NCBI RefSeq assembly: GCF_020745735.1
Contig: NC_083435.1
Span: 26,721,231 to 26,785,230 of the forward strand
Direction of reading: 5' to 3'
Source: Hemiscyllium ocellatum
Lineage: Eukaryota
Length of the DNA stretch: 64,000 nt
A program made the position numbers and the translations under genes. How positions within the stretch are numbered: position 1 is the first letter of the stretch; the number at the start of each line of letters is the position of its first letter. Shown here one piece after another: positions 7,231 to 60,716 of the stretch. The notes beneath the pieces were generated by a model. It was not told the origin of the DNA. It did not search any database and was given only the letters and a program-made list of their open reading frames with translations.

Positions 7231-7627
7231 GCTTGACAGCGATAACTCTAAATGACAGCTTGAGTTTCTGTTTGACAGGGATGACTGGCTCAGAATTACA
7301 ATTTTTAAAAAAAATACTTGTAGGATGTGGGTGTCATTGGCTGGGCCAATTAGTGCTGACAGGTGAACCAGAATTGAAACATTAACTCTGCTGAGTTCCT
7401 CCAGCAATTTTAGTTGTTGTTTCATATGTCCAGCTTCCGCAATTTCCTATCACTTGCTGCCATTGAGAAGGTGGTGGTGAGCTGCCTTCCTGAACCACTG
7501 CAGTCCATGTGCTGTAGTGAGACCCCTAATGTGTTCCTAATTGACAGCGATATCTGATGGACAGCTTGCGTTTCTAGTGGACATGGATGACTGGCTGTGA
7601 TTGGCAGTTTGTGTTTCTGATGGGCAG

Positions 7628-7896
7628 GAATTCACATATTGCAGATGGTGAGTGGTGGTGAATTCAGGGACAATGATGAGTGGATTTTATCAATTTGGAT
7701 GGAATAGATAAGATTTTATCAGCTTCAGTAAAGATCACATGCTATGGATGACCCCATTACTTTGGTCAGAAAGCATCAAAAACAGATGGGACCAACATGT
7801 GGTGACCAAGCATTGGTGAAGCATGACTGGGAGGAGCGGTATATTGAATGGCTGAGGAAATACTTGAAGTATTAACAGATAAAGAACTGAGAGTTG
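7628..7896 (+). pseudogene. MHC class I-like pseudogene C: alpha2 exon with stops and frameshifts (inverted block)
   Basis: Acceptor TTTCTGATGGGCAG and donor GTGAGT; reads GIHILQMVSG..SGFYQFGWNR*DFISFSKDHMLWMTPLLWSESIKNRWDQHVV..IEWLRKYLKY*. It is 269 bp versus 273 bp in A and B, and both Cys codons are lost. Confidence 0.93.
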
Positions 7897-21166: not shown

Positions 21167-21207
21167 TTAGGTATTGGCAGAACCGTCTGAGGGTGTCCTA
21201 TCATCAG
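21167..21207 (-). CDS. MHC class I-like gene A, last cytoplasmic exon (T-DDRTPSDGSANT*)
   Basis: Acceptor CTCTTTCCATTACAG, phase 1, stop TAA at 21169-21167; downstream UTR homologous to gene B. Confidence 0.85.
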
Positions 21208-21544: not shown

Positions 21545-21577
21545 TGTTTGTGGGATCGTAGCTATTCTTCACTTCCT
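21545..21577 (-). CDS. Gene A cytoplasmic exon 1 (E-EVKNSYDPTN), 33 bp, Tyr motif
   Basis: Acceptor TTGTTTTTGCAG, donor GTAAGC, phase 1/1; resembles the conserved Tyr-bearing class I tail exon. Confidence 0.88.
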
Positions 21578-22150: not shown

Positions 22151-22255
22151 CTTTCTTCTTGTAGATGAAGACAGCCGCAACAGCAAGAGCAACGATCCCA
22201 ACGACCCCAAGTAGAATCCAGACAGTCATGGGAACCTGGGAGCGAGATGTCGGGA
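22151..22255 (-). CDS. Gene A transmembrane exon (V-PTSRSQVPMTVWILLGVVGIVALAVAAVFIYKKK)
   Basis: 105 bp, AG/GT flanks, hydrophobic stretch followed by KKK. Confidence 0.95.
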
Positions 22256-23093: not shown

Positions 23094-24018
23094 TCTGTTC
23101 CTCCAGTTCATTTGCCAATAACTTGTTAATTTTAACATTTAGTAATTTTTCTTGTAACTTGTTACATATCTCACGAGTTTGGTCTATCCCCCAATGTGGT
23201 GTCATCTGCAAATTCAGGAATTGTATTTTGATCAGCAGAATCACTGACTGATTAGATTATTCCAGTGTAACATTCAGCAGTCCGGTCAAGTGTGCATGTG
23301 CCTCCTCTGAGATTTTGGTTCTGCTGTCTCCTATTCCATTTATAAAAGAAGATTTTAAATTCTATTGGAAAGAGACAGTAAATGATGCTGAATCATTAAT
23401 TTCAGAATCATTTCAGAAATCCAGTGAAGACGCAGGGGGCAATCTGGGATTTCATGATTCCAAAGTCCAGGTCATTCTTGGAAATTGTGATCAGCAATGT
23501 TTCTAGCACTTGTCCTTGTGGAATATTAATTCCTGCATCTTGAAGCTCTAACAATCCATTTCCAGATCTGTTTCTTGTCTTGAAACCGCCCAACAATCAA
23601 TTTCACGACATTTCCACTCTTGCCACATTCTCTGAATTGAATTTATTCTTTTGTTATGGAAGTATTTAATATGTTTTTTAAAAACCTGCATAAATTACAT
23701 ACATAATATTACTGCTACGAGCCTGATACCACATGAAAAACTTCAGTGAAGTTGGTCAAACATAATATTTCCTCTCAGTCTATGCTGACTTTTTTTGATT
23801 TCATTTAAATCAAAAATAGAAGGTCCTATCATTCTGTTATATCCCAGAATATAACAGCAGGTTAACAGCACCTGAGTAACAGAAAACTGCCTCAATTACT
23901 GTTTTCTAAAAAGAAATGATGTGAGCCCCTGTCCTGATGAGGCAGGTCGGCACTGATTCCCCCTCCTGTAATCCTGGTTTATGTTTGGCTCCTCTCTGAC
24001 AGTGAGAAATAGTCTTAC

Positions 24019-24282
24019 CATAAATTACCACCAGCGTCTCCTCCAGCCCACTGTGCTCCACCTGACAGGAATACTCGGCCTGATCCTCTGGATTAAACCC
24101 CACCCATTTCCGGATCTGATAAGTCCTGTTGTGATTGGGTAAGATCCCTGTGGACAGGGTCTCATCGATCAACACTTCGTCCCTCCACAGAGTCACCTCG
24201 ATGGCTTGTGGGTAAAACCCAGTGACGAGACAGGACAGCCAGTTAGAATCACCCAGACTGGTAAAGGACACGTCAGGGGGAA
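24019..24282 (-). CDS. Gene A alpha3 (C1-Ig) exon
   Basis: 264 bp; LSCLVTGFYPQAIEVTLWRD..PNHNRTYQIRKW..EYSCQVEHSGL; both Cys present; canonical splice sites. Confidence 0.97.
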
Positions 24283-24399
24283 CTAAGGGAGACAGAAACA
24301 GGCATCAGTGCAGGAATGTCAAGATACACTGCCAGGGTACCATACCCTTCAAAGACTCTCTCTCCCTCCTCACTACCTACTGGCTCCCCCCATGCTCAC

Positions 24400-24672
24400 C
24401 GACTTTCAGTTGTCGCTGTCCATACTCCAAGTATCTCTTCAGCCAATCAATACATTCCACATCGAGGTAATGCTTCCACCGCTGATTGTCCACCACATCC
24501 TGGTCCCACCTGTTCTTGATACTTTCTCCCCAGGAGACTGGGGTCACCCACACCATATGATTTTTATCCAAGCTGAGGATGTCTTGTCCATCCCATCCAT
24601 ATTGGTTGAATCCACTTGTCATCCCATCAGCACTCAGGTCACAGCCGGTCATCATTTGATACGTATGGATCC
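24400..24672 (-). CDS. Gene A alpha2 exon
   Basis: 273 bp; GIHTYQMMTGCDL..FNQYGWDGQD..KNRWDQ..YLDVECIDWLKRYLEYG; canonical splice sites. Confidence 0.97.
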
Positions 24673-24851
24673 CTGTCAATCAGAAACACAAGCTGCCAAT
24701 CAAATTGAATTGAATTAGCTTCTTGTCACATGCATTCGAATGAATGCAGTGAAAAGTTTGCAATGTCGCCACTTTTGGCACTATGTTAGGTACAAAATAC
24801 CTATAGACACTTAATATTTAGGTACAAAATTGAAACAATAATAAATATCCA

Positions 24852-25165
24852 GGTAGGCGGCACGGCGGATAGCACTGCTGCCTCACAGCACTAGAGGTTC
24901 AATTCCGCCTCAGGCAACTGTCTGTGTGGAGTTTGCACGTTCTCACTGTGTCTCTGTGGGGTTCCTCCGCGTGCTCTGGTTTCCTCCCACATTCCAAAAT
25001 TGTGCAGATTAGGTGAATTGGCCTTGCTAAATTGCCAGTAGTGTTAGGTGAAGGGGTAAATGTAAGGGAAAGAGTCTGTGTGGGTTACTTTTCGGAGGGT
25101 CGGTGTGGACTTGTTGGACCGAAAGGCCTGTTTCCACACTAAGTAATCGAAAAAAAACAAATCTA
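24852..25165 (+). mobile_element. HE1-type SINE in gene A intron 2
   Basis: Consensus head, central domain and tail; accounts for part of the 971-bp versus 212-bp intron difference from gene B. Confidence 0.92.
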
Positions 25166-25643
25166 AGATTATAAACGCTATTTACAATCCTTTCACCCCA
25201 GTCTTTGCCAACACCGAGCCCACAGGCTGCTTAGGGCAAAGTCTCCAAACAGCACCAAGCTTCAAAACTCAAGGCCTCACTGCCAGTCTGCAAGGTCCTC
25301 TCCTCCTCACACTGGCCTCCCGTCCGGGAGTTGTCTCCTTTATTCCCCTCTGAGCAAGTCTTTAAAAAAAAAGTGTTTAAAAAAAAAGTGAAGAAAAGAA
25401 AAAAGACAGAACAGAGGAAATCTGTCTGAAGCATCCTACTCAGCCATTTTTCTGTAGAAAATCAGAGACAGTCATCCCTGTCAATCAGAAATAAAAGCTG
25501 CCAGATACCATGTCAGTAGGAGATGCCAACTACAGAGAATCAGGCTCTGATTAGAGATTCTGATCCACTCTTGGTTTCTTTCTATTCTCATCGACTCCTG
25601 ATCACACAGGAAGATGTCAAGCTTTTGGAGAGGGAGGACTCAC

Positions 25644-25904
25644 CATCTGTTTGGTTGTTCCGTGACTTCAAGCTCAGAACAGCGTTTTTGAAATTCCTTT
25701 CCTGCTCCCGAGCAAGAGATAGTTTCCGTTTCCAGGCCTCAGGCCCCTCGCTCACCACCATCCACTGTTCCCGGGGGATCAAATTCTTCTGATCACTGTC
25801 ATATGTAACAAACTGGACTCCATCCACATAACCAACAATCACAAACTGCGGGAAAGCAGGATCTGGAGTCATAGCAGTGAAGAAGTACCGGAGAGAGTGA
25901 GTGT
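25644..25904 (-). CDS. Gene A alpha1 exon
   Basis: 261 bp; DTHSLRYFFTAMTP..FVIVGYVDGVQFVTYDSD..EGPEAWKRK..RNNQTD; canonical splice sites. Confidence 0.97.
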
Positions 25905-26593
25905 CTGAAATGAAGAGAGAGAGAGCGAGAGCAAGATATCAGGACATGAATCCCTAAACACCAATCACAAAAGCTCCAACTAAACATGGAGGGAAACTTC
26001 TATGTACTCTGCACCTGTGTTTATTAAGCCCAAGTTCCCACTGGTGACATTAACCACCTTCTGAACTTGTCCCCCAGTCCCAAATCTTCCAATGACTTTT
26101 ACAATTCCTGGTCTGTTCCTGCACAGGATTTAAAAATTAATGGTTTATTTTGTTTTTCTTCCTTCTTCCTGCTAAAATGTATAACTCTGCACTTCTCTGT
26201 ACTCACATTCATCAGTCACTTAATGGCCATTTCCACTAACATTGTATGTGTGTTCTATCAGTTCACCTGAAGGTCAGAGACCAAGCAACTTAAGTCAGGA
26301 ATTCTAAGAGTTCCTTCCAGGTTAGTGAGCAGGCAGCAGGACGAAAATGGCAGTTTCTCACAATTTTGTAAGTAGAGGAACAGTTTGTTTTTCAAATTAA
26401 TTCCAGATTCTTCAGAAGAAAAAAGGTTGAGGCTCTAACTTTCAGGCAGTTCTAGTTGTTAACCCAGACAGTCTGTTATTTTCTTGGCCGGTGGGAACAG
26501 ACTGATTCAGAAGTTCAGAATGTGATATTAAAGGTCTCCAAAAATCAAAGATGCATCTCTGTCAAATGAAACTGGCCAACAACAGGACAAAGG

Positions 26594-30665: not shown

Positions 30666-30714
30666 CGGCACAAAGCTTTCCACACAGAAGACCCAGCACT
30701 AACAGTCCAATCAT
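30666..30714 (-). CDS. Gene A leader (signal peptide) exon MIGLLVLGLLCGKLCA
   Basis: 49 bp, phase-1 donor GTAAGC; joins alpha1 as ..LCA-DTHSLRY; homologous to the other two leader exons. Confidence 0.92.
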
Positions 30715-32654: not shown

Positions 32655-33755
32655 TCTCTCAGTCTGAACTGTATCTTATATTGACACTGTCCCTCTAAGT
32701 GAGGGAGCTTTGTCCTGTACTGACACTGTCCCTCTCAGTCTATGCACTGTGTCTTGTACAATACTGTCTCTGTCAGTCTGTGAGCTGTATCATGTACTGA
32801 CACGCTCCCTCTCAAGTCTGTGAGCTGTGTCCTGTACCACAGAATTTCCCATGGGATCCCTGCAGTGTGGAAACAGGCCCTTCAGCCCAGCAAGTCCACA
32901 CTAACACTCTGAAGAGTATCCCACCCAAACCCGTTCTACATTACTCTACAATTACCCCTGATGAATGCACCTGACTTACACATCCCTGAACACTGTGGGC
33001 AATTCACCTAACCTGCACATGTTTGGATTGTGAGAGGAAACCAATGCAAACACAGGGAATAGAATGCGCAAACTCTACACAGATAGTTACCCAAGGCTGA
33101 AATTGAACCCAGGTCCCTGGCACTGTGAGGCAGCAGTGCTAACCACTGAGCCACCATGCTGCCCCTCTGTCTCTCTCAGTCTGTGAGCTGTGTCCTGTAC
33201 TGACACTGCCTATCACAGTCTGTGAGCTGCAACTTGTCTCCCTCTCTCAGTCTATAAACTGTCTATTGTACTGCCACTATCCTTCACAGTCTGTGTGCTG
33301 TCCCTACACTGACACTGTCCCTTTCAGTCTGAGCTGTGTCCTTTACTGATACTATTCCTCTTGAGTCTGTGAGCTGTGTCCAGTATTGATCCTGTCCCTT
33401 TCAGTCTGTGAGTTGTGTCCTTTACCAATACTGTCTCTCTCAGTCTTTGAGCTGTATCCCTGTACTGACAACGTCCCTCTCAGTCTGTGAGCTGTGTCCT
33501 GTATTATCACTCTCCCTTTCAGTCTGTGAGCTGTATCATGTACTGAGACAGTCTCTTTCAATCTGTGAGCTGTGTCCTGTGCTGACATTGTCCCTCTCAG
33601 TCTGTGACCTGTGTCCTGAATTCTCACTGTCCCTCTCAGTCTGTGAGCTGTGTCGTGTTGCTATACTGTCTGTTTCAGTCTGTGAGCTGCGTCCTGTACT
33701 GACACTCTCCCTCTCAGTGTCCTTTACTGACACTGTCTCTTTCAGACTATAAACT
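32655..33755. repeat. 39-bp minisatellite (CTGTCCCTCTCAGTCTGTGAGCTGTGTCCTGTACTGACA), interrupted by a SINE
   Basis: About 5 copies at 32655-32840 and about 15 at 33166-33755. Confidence 0.93.
32855..33165 (-). mobile_element. HE1-type SINE inside the minisatellite
   Basis: Reverse complement of consensus. Confidence 0.9.
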
Positions 33756-38865: not shown

Positions 38866-41800
38866 ATAGAGCATAGAACATAGAAATGTACAGCACAGAA
38901 CAGACCAATCAGCCCACGATGTTGTGCCAAGAATTATTCCTAATCTAAAATAAAAATAACCGAACCTACGCACCCCTCAATTTACTGCTGTCCATGTGCA
39001 TGTCCAGCAGTCGCTTAAATGTCCCTAATGACTCTTCTCCCACTGGCAACGTATTCCATGCATTCACAGCTCTCTGCATAAAGAGCCTACCTCTGACATC
39101 TTCTCTATACCATCCTCCTAATATCTTAAAACTATAAACCCTCGTGCCAGTCAATCCTGCCCTGGGGAAAAGTCGCTGGCTATTGATTTTATCCATTCCT
39201 CTCATTACCTTGTATACCTTGATCAGTCACTTCTCTTCCTCCTTCTCTCAGAGAGAAAAGTCTGAGCTTAGTCAACCTCCCTCCGTAAGACAAGCCCTCC
39301 AGTCCGGCAGCATCCTGGTAAACCTTCTTTGCACCCTCACCAAAGCCTCTGTATCTTTCCTATAATAGGGTGACCAGAACTGGACAGAGTATGCCAAGTG
39401 TGGTCTCACTGGGTCTTGTAGAACTGCAGCAAACCCTCGCGGCTCTTAAACCTGATCACCCTGTTAATGAAAGCCAAAACACCATATGCTTTCTGAACAA
39501 CTCTATCCACTTGGGTGGTAACTTTGAAGGATCTATGTACTTGCACATCCAGATCCCTCTGTTCCTCCACACTGCCAACAATCCTGTCTTTAATCTTATA
39601 TTCAGCATTCAAGTGCAACCTTCCAAAATGCATCACTTTTCATTTATCCAGGTTGAACTCCATCTGCCATTTCTCAGCCCAGCTCTGCATCTTGTCTATG
39701 TCGTACTGCAGTCTGCAATAGCTCTCGATACGATCAACGGCACCTCCAATCTTTGTATCATTGGAAAATTTACTAACCTACCCATCAATCTCCTCATCCA
39801 AGTCTTTTATAAAAACTACAAAGAGCAGAGGCCCAAGAACAGAGCCATGCAAGATACCACTCACCACTGACCTCCAGGCTGAATAGTTTCCATCTACAAC
39901 CAATCTCTGCCCTCTGTCAGCCAGCCAATTTTGAATTCAGACAGCCAAATCCTGTATCCCATTCCTCATGACTTTATGAATGAGCCTACCATGGGGAACC
40001 TTTTCAAATGCCTTGCTGAAATCCATATACACCACATCCACTGCTCAACCTTCATCGACCTTTCTCGTCATCTCATCAAAGAATTCAATAAGGTTTGTGA
40101 GGCATGACCTGCCCCTCACTAAGCCATGCTGACTGCCTTTAATCACACCATGCATTTCCAAATAGTCATAAATCCTATCCCTCAGAATTCTTTCCAGAAC
40201 CTTGCTGATCACAGATGTAAGACTGACGGGTCTGTAATTGCCAGGGATTTCCCTGTTCCTCTGCTTGAATAGAGGAACAACATTCACCTCCCTCTAATCC
40301 TCTGGTATGACTCCCATGGAAAGTGAGGAAATAAAGTGGCATAGCAACCTCCTTTCTTGCTTCCTGGAGCAACCTAAGTCTGGTCTATCATTCTTAACGT
40401 TGACCAAAATTTCCAGCACATCAACTTCATCAATCTTGATCTGTTCAAACCTGTTTCCCAGCTCATCAAAGTTCTCATTCACAACAAGGTCCCTTTCCTT
40501 AGTGAAACCAAAGCAAAAAACTCACTCAGGACTTCATCTATCTGCTCAGACCCTACGCATAAGTTCCCTACACTATCCCTGGCCAGCCCTTCCTTCTCCA
40601 TGATCAAACTCTTATTCCTCATGTATGAGTAAAATGCCTTTGGGCTCTTCCTAATCCTTTCTGCCAAGCCTTTTTCGTGCACCTTCTTGGCTCTCCTCAA
40701 TCCATTTCTGAGCTTTCTCATAAGCCTGTAATCCTCTAAAGCTGTGCTCGATCCTTGCTTCCTCCACTTTATGTAAGCTGCCTTCTTCCGCTTCTGTTCT
40801 CGTCATCCAAGGCTCCTTAACCTTACCCTTTCTTGCCTGCCCCAGAAAATAAATTTGTGCATCACTATCAACAACCACTCCTTAACCAGTCTCCACATGT
40901 CTGTTGTACCATTTCTGTGGAACAATTGCACCCAATCTGTACTTTCCAACTCCTGTCTGGTAGCGTCATAATTTCCTTTTCCCCAGTTAAATATATTCCC
41001 TTGGTAACTGCTCCTTTCCCTCTCCAAGGCTGTGGTAAATGTGAGGCAGTTGTGGTCACTGTCACCAAAGTGTTCTCCCCCCACGAGATCTGACACCTGT
41101 CCTGGCTCATTGCTGAGCACCAAATCCAAAATGGCCTCTCCCCTCGTCGGCCCTGTCTACATACTGAGTATGGAAACCCACCTGAACATACCTGACAAAA
41201 ACGGCTCCATCCAAACCATCTGCACTAAGGAGGTTCCAGTCGATATTGGGAAAGTTGAAGTCACCCATAGCAACAACCCTGCCACCTCTGCATTGTTCTA
41301 AACTCTGCTGGCCTATGTGTTCTCCCTACTGCTATTAGGGAGTCTGTAGAAAACCTCCAATGAGTTGGCTGCACCCTTGCTGTTCCTAACTTCCACCTAT
41401 ACTGACTCAGTAGACAAACCTTCCTCAATAACCTGCATTTCTGTAGCTGTGATGCACCCTCTGATTAGCAATGCTGCACCCCTCCTCTTTTTCTACCTTC
41501 CCTGTTCTTTTTAAACGTTCTAAACCCTGGAACAGCTAGCAACCATTTCTACCCCTGTGAAATCCACATCTCCATTATGGCCACACCATCATAGTCCCAA
41601 GTACTGATCCATGCTCTAAGTTCACCACTCTTATTTCTGACACTCCTTGTGTTAAAGCAGACACACTTTAACCGATCCCTTTGTTTTATCGTGTGAAAAA
41701 CCTTCCTGATAGATTCACTCCATCATGTCACTGTCCTATCTACAACTATCCCCCCCTCAGATATGTAGCTCTGGTTCCCAAAGTAGTTTAAACCGTCCCA

Positions 41801-44949: not shown

Positions 44950-47900
44950 TAATTCATAAATTTGTATAAACTAATTAAATAAGTAGAGGTGACTGGACAG
45001 GTGATGTGCTGTAGCTGTATGATGTGGGAGCTGGCTGATCCAATTGTAAACAGCAGTGACCACATCTGCAGCAAGCATTGGTTGCTGAAATAAACTCCGG
45101 ATAAGAATTGATGATCTGGAATCTGATCTTCAAACTGCAGCACATTCGGAAAGGGGAATAGTTACCTGGACACTTTGTTTCAGGAGGCAGTCGCACCAAA
45201 CAAATTCAGTTAGTGATCAGGAACAACAGAGTGTGACTGTAAGTGAGGCAGGTAGGGGGATCCCGAGTTCAGGAGTGGACAAACCTCAGCCCTTAACCTT
45301 GTCCAACAGATATGAGATTTTTGCTCCCTGTATGGATGAGGAAAAGGGCTGTGGATAGGATGTGCCAGCTAACCATGGCACCATGGTGCCGAAGGCCATC
45401 TAAGAGGGGGGAGCAAAAAGCCAATAGTTGTTATGGGGGATAGTATCCTTTGCGAGCCAGATCGTGTGTCCTGCATGGTGTGTTGCCTGCCCGGTGCCAG
45501 GGTGCAGGACATCTCCGACCAGGTCGAAACGATATTGGAGTGGGAGGGAGAGGATCTAGTTGTTGTGGTCTACATTGGCACAAACAACGTAGGCAAGGCT
45601 TGGAAGGAGGGCCAGTTTGGGAGGTATCAAGCATTAGGAAGGAAATTGAAGAACAGGTCCTTGAGAGTCACAGTCTCTGGATTACTGCCCGAACTGTCTG
45701 CTAATTGGCAGAGGGATAAGAAAATTAGGGAAGTGAACATGTGACTAATAGACTGGTGTGGGAAAGAGAGATTTCATTTCATGGGACATTGGCATCAGTT
45801 TTGGAACCGGGGAGACTTGTACCAATGGGACAGTCTCCACCTGAACCGATCTGGAATCAGTGTTCTGGTGAAAACGATAAATTTGGTGGTCACTAGGACT
45901 TCAAACTTGCGAGTTGGGGAAAAAGGGAAAAGGAAAGCAACAGGGAGTATGGAGTCAAGTAGAAAGATAAGCAGCAGGTTAGCATGTGTGCGGGCTTTAA
46001 ATTCGAGGCAGACTAGGAATGGTGCAAAAAGGAAGGATAATTTAGGATATACTACTAGAGGTGATGGAAATCATGAGGATAAGACAATTAGCATTAAGGT
46101 GCTTTACCTGAATGCTCATAGTATTCGTAACAAAGTAGATGAATTAACAGCACAAATCATCGTGAATGATTATGAGGTGGTAGGCATCACAGAGATGTGG
46201 TTGCAGGGGGTTCAGCATTGGCAGTCTGTGGGTGGAGGAACCACAAAGGCAAAAAAAAAATGGGAGTTATGCAAGTCCTCCCAGCAGTGGTCAGGACCAG
46301 GAGCACAAGATGTACCAGGAAATAGATAGGGCATGTCAGAAAGGCAAGGTCGTGGTGATCATGGTATGCAAATTGACTGGCTGAATAATGTTGCCGGTAG
46401 ATCCAAAAGAAGGGAATTCGTGGAATGCTTACAGGACGGATTTTTGGAACATTTTGTGATGGAGCCCATAAGGGAGCAGGCTATTCTGGACTTAGTGTTA
46501 TGTAATGAGTTAGACTTTATAAAAGATCTTAAAGTAAGGGAACACTGAGGAGGCAGTGATCATGATATGGTAGTGTTCACTCTGCAGTTTGAAAGAGAGC
46601 AGGCAAACTCGGATGTAATGGTGTTACAATTAAATAAACGTAATTACAAGGGCATGAGAGAGGAACTGATGAAAATTGACTGGAAGCAGAGCCTAGTGGG
46701 GAAGACAGTAGAGCAACAGTGGCAGGAGTTTCTGGGTGTAATTGAGGATACAGTACAGAGGTTCATCCCAAAGAAATGAAAGATTATCTATTGTGGGGGT
46801 GGGGGTGAAATCAGACAGCCATGGAAGTCAGGAAATGTATCATTGAAAAAGAGAGAGCCTATAAAGTTACTAAGAGCATTGGGAAATCGGAAGATTAGGA
46901 AGACTACAAAAACAAACAGAGGATAACAAAGCGAGAAATAAGGAAGAAGATGATCAAATATGAAGGTAAGCTAGCCAGTAATATTAGAAATGATAGTAGA
47001 AGTTTCTTTCAATACATAAAAAACAAATGAAAGGCAAAAGTAGAAATTGGGCTGCTCCAAATTGATGCAGGAAGGCTTGTGATGGGCGATAATGGAAGAT
47101 AAAACTTAATAAATACTTTGTACCAGTCTTCACAGTGGAAGACATGAGTAATATCCCAACAATTAAGGAGAGTCAAGGGGCAGAGTTGAGTATGGTAGCC
47201 AATACAAAAGAGAAAGTGCTAGAAAATCTAAAAGTTCTAAAAATTGATCAAGTTCCTGGCCCTGATGGGCTACATCCAAGAGTTCTGAGGGAGTGGCTGA
47301 AGAAATAGTGGAGGCATTGGTTGTAATCTTTCAAAAATCACTGGAGTCAGAAAAAGTCCCAAATGATTGGAAAATTGCTGTTGTAACTCCCTTGTTCAAA
47401 AAAGGATCAAGACAAAAGATGGAAAATTATAGGCTGATTAGCCTAACCTTGTTTGTAGGTAAAATTCTACATTCCATCATTAAGGATGCGATTACTAAAT
47501 TCTTGCAAGTGCAGGGTCAGATTAGAATAAGTCAGCATGAATTTAGTAAGGGGAGGTCATGTCTGACAAACCTGTTAAAATTCTTTGAAGAGGTAACAAG
47601 TAGGTTAGACCAGGGAAATGCGATGGATGTTATCTACCAAGACTTCCAAAAGGCCTTTGATAAGGTGCCTCACGGGAGGCTGCTGAGTAAGGTGAGGGCC
47701 CATGGTGTTCAGGGTGAGCTAATGGCATAGATTGAGGATTGGCTGTCTGACAGAAGGCAGAGAGTTGGGATAAAAGGTTCTTTTTTGGAATGGCAGCCGG
47801 TGACAAGCGTTGCCCCACAGGGTTCAGTGTTGGTGCCGCAGCTGTTCACTTTATATATTAATGACCTGGATGAAGGGACTGGGGGCATGCTGGCGAAGTT

Positions 47901-49085
47901 CGCTGATGATATGAAGTTAGGCGGAAGTGAGGTAGTTCTGAGGAGGTGGGGAGGCTGCAGAAAGATTTTGACAGTTTAGGAGAGTGGTCCAAGAAATGGC
48001 TGATTAAATTCAATGTGAGCAAATTTAGAAAAAAGAATACAGGGACTATTTTCTAAATGGTGAGAAAATTCCGAAAGCCAAGGTACAAAGGTATCTGGGA
48101 GTGCTAGTCCAAGATTCTGTAAAGGGGTGGCACGGTGGCTCAGTGGTTAGCACCGCTGCCTCATAGCACCAGGGTCCCAGGTTTGATTCCAGCCGCGGGC
48201 TGTGTGGAGTTTGCACATTCTCCCCATGTCTGCATGAGTTTCCTCTCACAGTCTAAAGACATGCAGGTCAGGTGAATTGGTCATGCCAATTTGCCCATAG
48301 TGTTCGGTGCATGAGTCAGAGGGAAATGGGTCTGGGTGGCTTACTCTTCAGAGGGTCGGTGTGGACTGGTTGGGCTGAAGGGCCTGTTTCCATACTGTAG
48401 GGAATCTAATGTAAAGGTTGAGTCTGTGGTGAAGAAAGCAAATTTAATGTTCTCATTTATCTCAAGAGAGTTGAAATGTAAAAGCAGCAATGTGCTACTG
48501 AGACTTTGTAAAGCTCTGGTTAGGCCCCATTTAGAATACTGCGCCCAGTTTTGGGCCCCACACCTCAGGAAGAACATCCTGGCACTGGAGCATGTCCATC
48601 AGAGATTTACACAGACGATCCCTGAAATGGTAGGCCTAACATATGATGAACAGCTGAGGATCCTGGGATTGTATTCATGAGAGTTTTGAAGGTTGAGGGG
48701 AGATCTAATAGAAACTGACAAGATAATGCATTGCTTAGAAAGGGTGGATGGTGGAAATTTGTTTCTGTCAGGCAGGGATGCTAGGACTCGTTGGCATAGT
48801 CTTAGAATTAGAGGGGGTAAATTTAAAATGGAAATGAGGAGACATTTCTTCAGCCAGAGAGTGGTGGGCCTGTGGAATTCATTTCCACGGAGTTCAGTGG
48901 AGGCCGAGATGTTAAATGTCTTCAAGGCAGAGGTTGATAATTATTTGTGAGATCAGGAATTTAAGGGATGTGGGGAGAGTGCGGGTTAGTGGCGTTGAAC
49001 TGTCCATCGGCCATGATTGAATGGCAAAGTGGACTCGATGAGCTGAATGGTCTTATTTCCACTCCTATGTCTTATAGTCTTGAGA
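44950..49085 (+). mobile_element. Near-full-length decayed CR1 LINE (ORF1 esterase, ORF2 endonuclease-RT with internal deletion)
   Basis: MGDSIL..CLPGARVQD..IGTNN; KVLYLNAHSIRNKVDEL..GITEMWL; DWKIAVVTPLFKKG..DFQKAFDKVPH; PQGSVL..FADD; tail repeat. Confidence 0.95.
48126..48409 (+). mobile_element. HE1-type SINE nested in CR1, 8-bp TSD
   Basis: TSD TGTAAAGG at 48118-48125 and 48410-48417. Confidence 0.93.
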
Positions 49086-51153: not shown

Positions 51154-51197
51154 TCAGATTCGAGCAAATGTGGCTGTGGACTTTTTTCCATCAGAAG
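51154..51197 (-). CDS. MHC class I-like gene B, last cytoplasmic exon (A-SDGKKSTATFARI*)
   Basis: Acceptor CTCTTTCCATGAACAG homologous to gene A, phase 1, stop TGA at 51156-51154. Confidence 0.8.
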
Positions 51198-51460
51198 CTG
51201 TTCATGGAAAGAGAAGCATTTAAAATCTGTTGGGGGGGGGGGGGGGGTGGTGGGTGAGGAGAGGAGTGAGTGAGTGAGTGAGTGAGAGAGAGAGATGTAA
51301 ACATTAGAGACAACAGATAGACAGAAGAGCAAGGAGAAATTCATTGAGAGCATCAAAGACAGGGAGAGACATAAAAGAGGACAGAAACAAACTATTGTAT
51401 GTATCCGACCCAGAAAGAAGACTCAGAGTCACAGTACTATAGAGATCCAGAGATGTCTGA

Positions 51461-52675: not shown

Positions 52676-52780
52676 CTTTCTTCTTGTGAAAGATGATACC
52701 CACAACAGAGAGAGAGATGATCCCGAGGACTCCAAATACAATCCCGACAGTAGCAAGAACCTGGAAGTGAGACTTTGGGA
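52676..52780 (-). CDS. Gene B transmembrane exon (V-PKSHFQVLATVGIVFGVLGIISLSVVGIIFHKKK)
   Basis: 105 bp, canonical splice sites, homologous to gene A. Confidence 0.94.
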
Positions 52781-56389: not shown

Positions 56390-56653
56390 CATAAATCACC
56401 ACCAGCGTCTCTTCCAGCCCGCTGTGCTCCACCTGACAAGAATACTCGGCGTGATCTTCTGGATCAAACTCCACCCACTTCCGGATCTGGTAGGTCCCGT
56501 TGTGATTAGGTAAGATCCCAGTGGACAGGGTCTCATCGATCAACATTCCATCCCTCCGCAGAGTCACCTCAATGGCTTGTGGGTAAAACCCAGTGACGAG
56601 ACAGGACAGCCGGTTGGAATCACTCAGACGGATAAAGGACACGATGGGAGCAA
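56390..56653 (-). CDS. Gene B alpha3 (C1-Ig) exon
   Basis: 264 bp; LSCLVTGFYPQAIEVTLRRD..PNHNGTYQ..EYSCQVEHSGL; about 85% aa identity to gene A by hand count. Confidence 0.97.
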
Positions 56654-56783: not shown

Positions 56784-57056
56784 CCATTGTCAGTTCTCTC
56801 TGTCCATACTCTAGGTATTTCCTCAGCCATTCAATACACTCCACTTCCAGGTAATGCTTCCATCGCTGATTGTCCACTACATCTTGATCCCAACTGTTTT
56901 TGATGCTTTCTGCCCAGGGGACCGGAGTCACCCACACCATAAGATCCTTATCAAAGCTGATATAATCTCGTCCATCCCATCCATATTGGTTGAACCCACT
57001 CACAGTTTCATCATTCCTCAGGTCACAGCCAGTCATCATCTGGTGTGTGTGGACTC
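56784..57056 (-). CDS. Gene B alpha2 exon
   Basis: 273 bp; GVHTHQMMTGCDL..FNQYGWDGRDY..KNSWDQ..YLEVECIEWLRKYLEYG. Confidence 0.97.
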
Positions 57057-57268: not shown

Positions 57269-57529
57269 CGTCTGTTTGGTTGGTCTTTACTTTTAAGTTA
57301 TGAATAACATGTTTGAAGGCCAGCTCCTGCTCCCGAGCAAGGAATAGCTTCCGCTTCCAGGCCTCAGGTCCCTCGCTCTCCACCATCCACTGTTCCCGGG
57401 GGATCAACTTCTTCTGATCGCTGTCGTACTTAACAAACTGGATGCCATCAACATAACCAACAATCAAAAACTCTGGGAAACTGTTTACCGGAGTCAAGCC
57501 AGTGATAACATACCGGAGAGAGTGAATGT
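57269..57529 (-). CDS. Gene B alpha1 exon
   Basis: 261 bp; DIHSLRYVITGLTP..GYVDGIQFVKYDSD..EGPEAWKRK..KTNQTD. Confidence 0.97.
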
Positions 57530-60667: not shown

Positions 60668-60716
60668 CTGCAGAGAGCTCTCCCCACAGAAGTCCCAGCA
60701 CTATTAATCCAATCAT
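60668..60716 (-). CDS. Gene B leader exon MIGLIVLGLLWGELSA
   Basis: 49 bp, phase-1 donor GTGAGT; joins alpha1 as ..LSA-DIHSLRY. Confidence 0.92.

What the first reader, a model, noticed from the sequence alone, without database searches (positions are those of the whole stretch)
25723..25737. Remodelled, basic A-pocket: Y59A plus E63K (GPEAWKRK) in gene A, shared with gene B
Seen: both genes read EGPEAWKRKL (gene B 57348-57362) where classical class I has GPEYWxRE. Y7, Y159, W167 and Y171 are retained. At the other end T143 is I in both, K146 is R (A) or S (B), and position 84 is R (A) or K (B). Both also carry a Trp in the alpha2 helix (NQRWKHY). Known: Y59 and E63 help bind the peptide N-terminal amine, and T143/K146 bind the C-terminal carboxylate. 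Inference: a cavity lined by K61/R62/K63 would repel a free amine and could suit an anionic, phosphorylated, N-blocked or non-peptide ligand, i.e. a possible unconventional antigen-presentation system in sharks.
Basis: partly seen in the sequence, partly recalled or inferred. Interest (0 to 1): 0.78.

Follow-up and report, generated by a model that had tools for sequence, protein, structure and literature searches.

The report
Shark UBA-type nonclassical class I genes
The odd "GPEAWKRKL" groove motif is real, but it marks a whole, already described family of shark and ray nonclassical MHC class I genes (the UBA type), so these are two ordinary members of that family whose ligand is still unknown.

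Summary
Window 25723-25737 (minus strand) encodes A-W-K-R-K, and both genes read EGPEAWKRKL where classical shark class I (UAA, PDB 6LUP) reads EGPEYWERET. All the other residue calls hold as well.

Both genes are intact. They match two RefSeq proteins of the epaulette shark exactly and have orthologues in Chiloscyllium.

In a maximum-likelihood tree they fall in a clade supported at 100/99. It contains sharks, rays and two 1997 shark cDNAs, and fits the published multicopy UBA class Ib lineage. An earlier agent of this scan reached the same reading for the array about 127 kb upstream.

The motif is a trait of the whole lineage:
- No member has Tyr59.
- Lys63 occurs in 31 of 34 members, Leu66 in 30, Ile143 in 27 and Glu/Asp163 in 32.

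Arg62 is also the classical residue. Lys61 varies and faces another side of the helix. A conserved acid at 163 lies opposite Lys63.

The groove is under purifying selection. B-pocket residues that are polymorphic in UAA are fixed here, while the C-terminal clamps are relaxed.

Most likely these are oligomorphic class Ib molecules that bind ligands, probably peptides, with non-canonical N-terminal anchoring. No ligand evidence exists.

The parts
30666..30714 (-). Gene A leader exon (MIGLLVLGLLCGKLCA plus 1 base, phase 1)
   Evidence: Exact match to residues 1-16 of P0267. GT donor seen.
25644..25904 (-). Gene A alpha1 exon
   Evidence: AG acceptor and GTGAGT donor. Translation. Best solved match is 6LUP, E 1e-21.
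25723..25737 (-). The finding: codons A59 W60 K61 R62 K63 (HLA numbering) of gene A
24400..24672 (-). Gene A alpha2 exon (I143, R146, W147, W156, Y159, E163, W167, Y171)
24019..24282 (-). Gene A alpha3 (C1-set) exon
22151..22255 (-). Gene A connecting peptide and transmembrane exon
21545..21577 (-). Gene A cytoplasmic exon with Tyr (EEVKNSYDPTN)
21167..21207 (-). Gene A last coding exon (approximate ends)
   Evidence: Exact match to residues 330-341 of P0267.
60668..60716 (-). Gene B leader exon
57269..57529 (-). Gene B alpha1 exon
57348..57362 (-). Same AWKRK codons in gene B
56784..57056 (-). Gene B alpha2 exon (I143, S146)
56390..56653 (-). Gene B alpha3 exon
52676..52780 (-). Gene B transmembrane exon
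51154..51199 (-). Gene B last coding exon (short tail without Tyr; approximate ends)
   Evidence: Exact match to residues 318-331 of P0272.

Best explanation
Genes A and B are two tandem, intact paralogues of the elasmobranch UBA-type nonclassical (class Ib) MHC class I lineage in the epaulette shark, Hemiscyllium ocellatum.

GPEAWKRKL is the local form of a signature shared by the whole lineage:
- Tyr59 is lost (replaced by Ala, Ser or Phe).
- Glu/Gln63 is replaced by an almost invariant Lys.
- Leu45, Leu66, mostly Ala67 and Thr99, and Glu163 are fixed or dominant.
- Thr143 is replaced by Ile.
- Positions 146, 147 and 84 vary between paralogues.

Shown here: the identity of the genes, their clade, the conservation pattern and purifying selection.

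Inferred: these are cell-surface, beta2m-associated class Ib molecules. All members share one enlarged, mainly hydrophobic N-terminal (A/B) pocket, rimmed by Lys63 and Glu163. The C-terminal half of the groove differs between paralogues. They would therefore bind a restricted ligand set through a common N-terminal or P2 moiety, without the classical Tyr59/Glu63 network. My odds on the ligand are about 45% peptides, about 25% non-peptide ligands and about 15% no ligand.
For: Identity:
- The ectodomains match RefSeq proteins P0267 and P0272 of H. ocellatum at 100%. Chiloscyllium punctatum orthologues are 95.5% and 93.6% identical.
- Pfam MHC_I and C1-set match both proteins.
- The AlphaFold model has mean pLDDT 90.9, and its best structural match is 6LUP.

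Lineage:
- The clade has support 100/99 and contains O19480 (Heterodontus) and O19479 (Ginglymostoma), other sharks and rays. It is sister to a group of classical UAA sequences.
- The literature describes UBA as multicopy, derived from UAA, first reported in 1997 and lying in a cluster of its own (PMC12562908, PMC10751288).

Signature in the 34 clade members aligned:
- Y59 in 0, K63 in 31, L66 in 30, L45 in 31.
- I143 in 27, E/D163 in 32, W167 in 34.

Inverted conservation:
- Positions 45, 63 and 66 carry 0.4-0.7 bits of entropy in the clade, against 1.8-2.6 in UAA.
- Positions 143, 146, 147 and 84 vary in the clade but are nearly fixed in UAA.

Selection:
- dN/dS is 0.28 for the A orthologues, with 0 nonsynonymous and 3 synonymous changes at groove codons.
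- dN/dS is 0.34 for the B orthologues.
- dN/dS is 0.24 for A against B, and 0.14 at groove codons.

Transcription: runs of only 150-253 million letters hold 42-53% of the words of the exon-rich stretch, against 28-30% of the intron-rich stretch.
Against: - No ligand, expression pattern or polymorphism was measured.
- The name UBA is tied to this clade through reviews and the 1997 accessions, not through the original papers. Bartl 1997 and Almeida 2020/2021 are not held in the library.
- The groove is more hydrophobic than in UAA (0.52 against 0.39 of the 35 tabulated groove positions).
- MR1 is the second-best structural match, and MR1 also has Ile at the T143 site. A non-peptide ligand is therefore not excluded.
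- Model coordinates are not returned, so no distance or electrostatic map was computed.
Confidence: 0.6

Rival explanations
1. The molecules present non-peptide ligands (lipid, lipopeptide or small metabolite), in the manner of MR1, CD1 or chicken YF1. The fixed pocket holds a common head-group.
For: - The groove is more hydrophobic than in UAA (0.52 against 0.39).
- Y59 and Y99 are replaced by small residues, which should enlarge the A/B pocket.
- MR1 entries rank directly after 6LUP in Foldseek.
- The alpha2 domain aligns without gaps to human MR1, which also has Ile at the T143 site and lacks K146.
- An invariant groove Lys recalls the ligand-capturing Lys of MR1 (from memory).
Against: - Y7, Y159, Y171, W167 and R84, which hold peptide main chain, are kept in 74-100% of members.
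- The residue at the site of MR1 Lys43 (HLA 45) is Leu.
- The alpha1 exon finds no MR1 among its 60 best solved matches.
- The groove is far from the almost wholly apolar grooves of lipid binders.
Confidence: 0.22
2. A positively charged A pocket (K61, R62, K63) repels a free amine and selects anionic, phosphorylated or N-blocked ligands.
For: - Y59 is lost and E63 is replaced by Lys at a groove-facing position.
- Lys63 is almost invariant over the shark-ray lineage.
- The N-terminal pocket is the conserved part of the groove.
Against: - R62 is the classical residue too.
- K61 is variable and lies on another helix face.
- Conserved E/D163 (32 of 34) can neutralise Lys63, and net charge over the tabulated groove positions is +2 against +1 in UAA.
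- Heptranchias P0208 carries K63 together with Y59, T143 and K146.
- No binding data exist.
Confidence: 0.12
3. The molecules carry no specific ligand. They act as surface ligands for NK-type or other receptors, or as regulators.
For: - Many class Ib molecules work this way (established knowledge).
- The C-terminal clamps are relaxed and differ between paralogues.
Against: - Groove codons are at least as constrained as the rest of the domain: dN/dS is 0 to 0.28 at groove codons against about 0.5 outside them.
- The model shows a regular open class I platform with confident helices.
Confidence: 0.12
4. They are decaying duplicates with no function.
For: - The surrounding array holds broken copies. 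A UBA-like alpha2 relic with stop codons lies at 7625-7878.
- Earlier agents found decaying copies upstream.
Against: - All exons are open, with canonical splice sites.
- Orthologues are kept in Chiloscyllium with dN/dS of 0.28-0.34.
- Small, transcript-like runs hold the exon words.
Confidence: 0.03

Closest known systems
Elasmobranch UBA nonclassical class I lineage (Bartl et al. 1997 cDNAs O19480 and O19479; Verissimo et al. 2023, PMC10751288; review PMC12562908)
   Same: - Same clade, with support 100/99.
- Multicopy and tandem.
- Close to classical UAA.
- Same groove signature: no Y59, K63, L66, I143, E163.
   Different: Nothing essential. A and B are the orectolobiform versions, with Lys also at 61 and Leu at 64. 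Their function is as unknown as that of the whole lineage.
Classical shark class I, Gici-UAA*01 (PDB 6LUP)
   Same: - Same fold and domain lengths; alpha1 aligns without gaps at 53% identity.
- Y7, R62, R84, W147, Y159, W167, Y171 and the N86 glycan site are kept.
   Different: - Y59A, E63K, T64L, Y99T, T143I and K146R/S.
- B-pocket residues are fixed instead of polymorphic.
- Groove codons are under purifying selection.
Mammalian MR1
   Same: - Second-best structural match.
- The alpha2 domain has the same length.
- Ile at the T143 site and no K146.
- Tyr59 is absent (His in MR1, from memory).
   Different: - No Lys at the MR1 K43 site (Leu here).
- No aromatic cradle.
- Alpha1 is not especially MR1-like.
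- The RefSeq name "MR1-like" is an automatic best-hit label, not orthology.
Mouse H2-M3 (N-formyl peptide presenter; from memory)
   Same: A class Ib molecule in which a remodelled, conserved A pocket dictates a special N-terminal chemistry.
   Different: H2-M3 changes W167 and Y171 and keeps other residues. Here W167 and Y171 are kept, and 59 and 63 are changed. This is an analogy only.

Membership tests
MHC class I heavy chain | An MHC_I alpha1-alpha2 platform plus a C1-set alpha3 domain, a leader and a transmembrane segment | tested here: met
   Pfam MHC_I matches at E 3e-46 and 6e-50, and C1-set at 8e-15 and 2e-15. The model has pLDDT 90.9. Exon structure.
Elasmobranch UBA class Ib lineage | Groups in a tree with the 1997 nonclassical shark cDNAs, apart from classical UAA | tested here: met
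   A 30-row clade with support 100/99 contains O19480 and O19479 and is separate from 6LUP and Triakis UAA. The 35-row version has SH-aLRT 99.
Elasmobranch UBA class Ib lineage | Multicopy tandem cluster | tested here: met
   The window holds two genes and an alpha2 relic. The same species has further paralogues P0166, P0168 and P0194. An earlier agent describes the array upstream.
Elasmobranch UBA class Ib lineage | Cluster flanked by c4 and rxrb, away from the class Ia region and from the UDA/UEA cluster | not tested
   The flanks lie outside the window. Earlier notes place UEA-type genes about 10 Mb away, which fits but was not checked here.
Elasmobranch UBA class Ib lineage | The published name UBA applies to exactly this clade | not testable with these tools
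   Bartl 1997 and Almeida 2020/2021 are not held. The link rests on PMC12562908 citing Bartl 1997 for UBA and on the two 1997 accessions.
Classical class Ia (UAA) | Invariant residues that bind the peptide termini: Y7, Y59, R/Y84, T143, K146, W147, Y159, Y171 | tested here: not met
   Gene A has A59, I143 and R146. Gene B has A59, K84, I143 and S146.
Classical class Ia (UAA) | Excess of amino-acid change at groove codons | tested here: not met
   Groove dN/dS is 0, 0.28 and 0.14 in the three comparisons. Polymorphism within the species was not tested.
MR1 | Groove Lys43 that forms a Schiff base with the ligand, and an aromatic cradle | tested here: not met
   The residue at the HLA-45 site is Leu in 31 of 34 clade members. 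The mapping of MR1 K43 to that site is from memory.

The most novel reading that the evidence does not exclude
All UBA members share one fixed N-terminal pocket, which I infer to be enlarged: no Tyr59, mostly Thr99, Leu45, Leu66, usually Ala67, Lys63 and Glu163. This pocket would be a dedicated receptor for one chemical head-group, such as an N-formylated or N-acylated peptide end or a small anionic or carbonyl metabolite. The variable C-terminal half of the groove would spread specificity over the paralogues. On this reading UBA is a specialised presentation system old enough to be shared by sharks and rays, analogous to H2-M3 or MR1, with Lys63 as the key ligand-contacting residue.
Probability: 0.15. 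Interest if true: 0.8.

Novelty: new member of a known kind. Interest (0 to 1): 0.3.

Why it matters
The function of the large UBA family of sharks and rays is unknown. The useful result here is not the two genes but the pattern across the family. The residues that give classical class I its allele-specific B pocket are frozen (K63, L45, L66, E163). The residues that are universally fixed in classical molecules to clamp the peptide ends are lost (Y59, T143) or free to vary (146, 147, 84). This gives a concrete, testable handle for finding the ligand: Lys63/Glu163 mutants, and peptides with a free N-terminus against blocked ones. It also corrects the idea of a strongly basic pocket. If the ligand proved to be a special chemical class, it would show that dedicated nonclassical presentation arose very early in jawed vertebrates.

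Tried and rejected
- Literature: the original UBA, UDA and UEA papers (PMC7002201, PMC8454915, PMC7039333, and by DOI and PubMed id) are not held. The supplements of PMC10751288 hold no UBA text. I could not check whether K63 or the inverted conservation pattern has already been described.
- Leader exons: a script search by ATG and hydrophobicity failed. tblastn with a relative found them 3-5 kb upstream.
- Electrostatics and distances such as Lys63 to Glu163: the structure tool returns no coordinates, so this was not done.
- MR1 orthology: rejected. The resemblance is confined to alpha2 length and a few residues, at the same level as duck and fish classical class I.
- Pseudogene reading: rejected.

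Full report
**Observation**

The finding lies on the minus strand. Window 25723-25737 reads GCC TGG AAA CGG AAA, which is A-W-K-R-K. The second site, 57348-57362, encodes the same residues. Both genes read EGPEAWKRKL.

The alpha1 exon of gene A aligns without a gap to the nurse shark classical class I chain 6LUP (E 1e-21). That chain has EGPEYWERET at the same place. In HLA numbering the changes are Y59A, E61K, E63K and T64L.

- Y7, Y159, W167 and Y171 are kept in both genes.
- Position 143 is Ile in both.
- Position 146 is Arg in A and Ser in B.
- Position 84 is Arg in A and Lys in B.
- Both have Trp at the 156-equivalent position.

**Gene models**

Both genes are complete, with canonical AG and GT sites and the usual phase-1 exon joins. 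Each has a leader exon 3-5 kb upstream, the alpha1, alpha2 and alpha3 exons, a transmembrane exon and cytoplasmic exons.

Every exon matches a database protein exactly:
- Gene A is P0267 (XP_060706467.1, 341 aa).
- Gene B is P0272 (XP_060706564.1, 331 aa).

Both are from Hemiscyllium ocellatum, so the window comes from the epaulette shark and the genes are already RefSeq models.

Pfam finds MHC_I and C1-set in both proteins. An AlphaFold model of the gene A ectodomain is confident (mean pLDDT 90.9) and shows a regular class I platform. Its long alpha1 helix spans residues 55-82, which is 57-84 in HLA numbering. Its best structural match is 6LUP.

**Family**

Relatives were found with the alpha1 exon and then with the best full-length representative. 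The ectodomains of A and B are 77% identical to each other. They are 95.5% and 93.6% identical to neighbouring Chiloscyllium punctatum genes, about 70% to many shark proteins, and only about 55% to classical UAA.

A quick tree of 64 rows placed A and B in a well-supported clade. A careful tree of 52 rows did the same, with ultrafast bootstrap 100 and SH-aLRT 99. For speed the careful tree left out P0151, P0158, P0172, P0173, P0187, P0195, P0199, P0202, P0214, P0224, P0239 and P0264.

The clade holds galeomorph sharks, a sawshark, rays, and the two 1997 cDNAs O19480 (Heterodontus) and O19479 (Ginglymostoma). It is sister to a group of classical UAA sequences.

This fits the published description of the UBA lineage. 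That lineage is an expanded class Ib family derived from UAA, first reported by Bartl et al. 1997 (PMC12562908). It forms a multicopy cluster of its own in the elasmobranch MHC (PMC10751288).

An earlier agent of this scan reached the same reading for the array about 127 kb upstream. I could not read the original papers, so the name rests on these secondary sources.

**The motif is a lineage trait**

Counts in the 34 clade members of my alignment:

| Position (HLA) | Residue | Members |
|---|---|---|
| 59 | Tyr | 0 (A 18, S 9, F 4) |
| 63 | Lys | 31 |
| 66 | Leu | 30 |
| 45 | Leu | 31 |
| 99 | Thr | 23 |
| 143 | Ile | 27 |
| 163 | Glu/Asp | 32 |
| 156 | Trp | 27 |
| 167 | Trp | 34 |
| 7 | Tyr | 28 |
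| 159 | Tyr | 25 |
| 171 | Tyr | 27 |
| 84 | Arg | 25 |

Arg62 is also the majority residue of classical UAA, which reads E-R-E. Lys61 is confined mostly to orectolobiforms, the sawshark and sawfish. Other members have Glu, Ala or Gln there.

Entropy shows an inverted logic:
- Positions 45, 63 and 66 are polymorphic specificity residues in UAA (1.8-2.6 bits) but nearly fixed in the clade (0.4-0.7 bits).
- Positions 59, 143, 146, 147 and 84 are fixed or nearly fixed in UAA but vary in the clade.

The N-terminal (A/B pocket) half of the groove is therefore the conserved half. The C-terminal half differs between paralogues.

**Selection and expression**

I took the orthologous exons from two Chiloscyllium loci and computed Nei-Gojobori dN/dS:
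- Gene A orthologues: 0.28, with 0 nonsynonymous and 3 synonymous changes at 40 groove codons.
- Gene B orthologues: 0.34, and 0.28 at groove codons.
- A against B: 0.24, and 0.14 at groove codons, with dS 0.53.

The ten motif codons differ between A and B at only three synonymous sites. The groove is thus conserved, not diversifying, which fits an oligomorphic class Ib molecule and argues against decay.

However, two runs of only 150-253 million letters from the same species hold 42-53% of the sampled words of the exon-rich stretch 24019-24672. They hold only 28-30% of the intron-rich stretch 23900-25950. Runs that small could not cover a shark-sized genome as DNA. I therefore infer that they are transcript libraries and that gene A is expressed.

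**What this means for the groove**

In classical class I, Y7, Y59 and D/E/Q63 hold a water and the main chain of the first peptide residue. R/Y84, T143 and K146 hold the C-terminus (PMC8236899).

In A and B the first network cannot form as usual.

The picture of a cavity lined by K61, R62 and K63 does not stand, for these reasons:
- Three consecutive helix residues face different sides.
- R62 is classical, and K61 is not conserved.
- A conserved acid at 163 lies on the opposite helix.
- The summed charge over the 35 tabulated groove positions is +2, against +1 in UAA.
- The Heptranchias protein P0208 carries K63, K64 and L66 together with Y59, T143 and K146. Lys63 is therefore compatible with the full classical clamp set.

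Replacing Tyr59 and Tyr99 by small residues, together with Leu45, Leu66 and Ala67, should instead give a larger and more hydrophobic A/B pocket. The hydrophobic fraction of the groove is 0.52, against 0.39 in UAA.

**Comparison with MR1**

RefSeq calls some of these proteins "MR1-like", and MR1 structures rank just after 6LUP in Foldseek. The alpha2 exon aligns without gaps to human MR1, which also has Ile at the T143 site and lacks K146. Duck and fish classical molecules score as well, however. The alpha1 exon does not find MR1 among its 60 best matches. The site of MR1's ligand-capturing Lys is Leu here; that mapping is from memory. This is a resemblance, not membership.

**Verdict**

- The genes are ordinary, intact members of the known UBA-type class Ib lineage.
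- The most likely mechanism is presentation of a restricted ligand set, probably peptides, anchored through a lineage-fixed N-terminal pocket in a non-canonical way. Non-peptide ligands remain a real alternative. Nothing here measures a ligand.

Noticed in passing
window 7625-7878 (+): A UBA-like alpha2 exon relic on the opposite strand, with in-frame stop codons. It is a dead fragment of a third class I copy.
   Followed up: partly
window 51154-51199 and 21545-21577 (-): Gene B has a short cytoplasmic tail (ASDGKKSTATFARI) and lacks the Tyr-bearing exon that gene A has (EEVKNSYDPTN). Its Chiloscyllium orthologue P0274 has the same short type of tail, so the difference is old.
   Followed up: partly
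window 45745-47975 (+) and 40000-41200 (-): Retroelement open reading frames lie between the two genes. One fragment at 47266-47727 matches Pfam RVT_1 (E 9e-11).
   Followed up: partly
window 33167-33718: A minisatellite of about 14 copies of a 39-base unit (71% matches) lies in the intergenic space.
   Followed up: no
P0208 (Heptranchias perlo protein, not in the window): This class I protein has an alpha3 domain 100% identical and an alpha2 domain 81% identical to a UAA-like paralogue (P0203). Its alpha1 helix, however, carries UBA-like K63, K64 and L66 next to Y59. It may be a mosaic or a convergent form.
   Followed up: partly
P0271 (Chiloscyllium plagiosum RefSeq model): A 671-residue "low quality" model fuses a B-like and an A-like class I protein in that order. 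The tandem B-A arrangement is therefore shared by bamboo sharks, and that model is a gene-prediction artefact.
   Followed up: no
   Followed up: no
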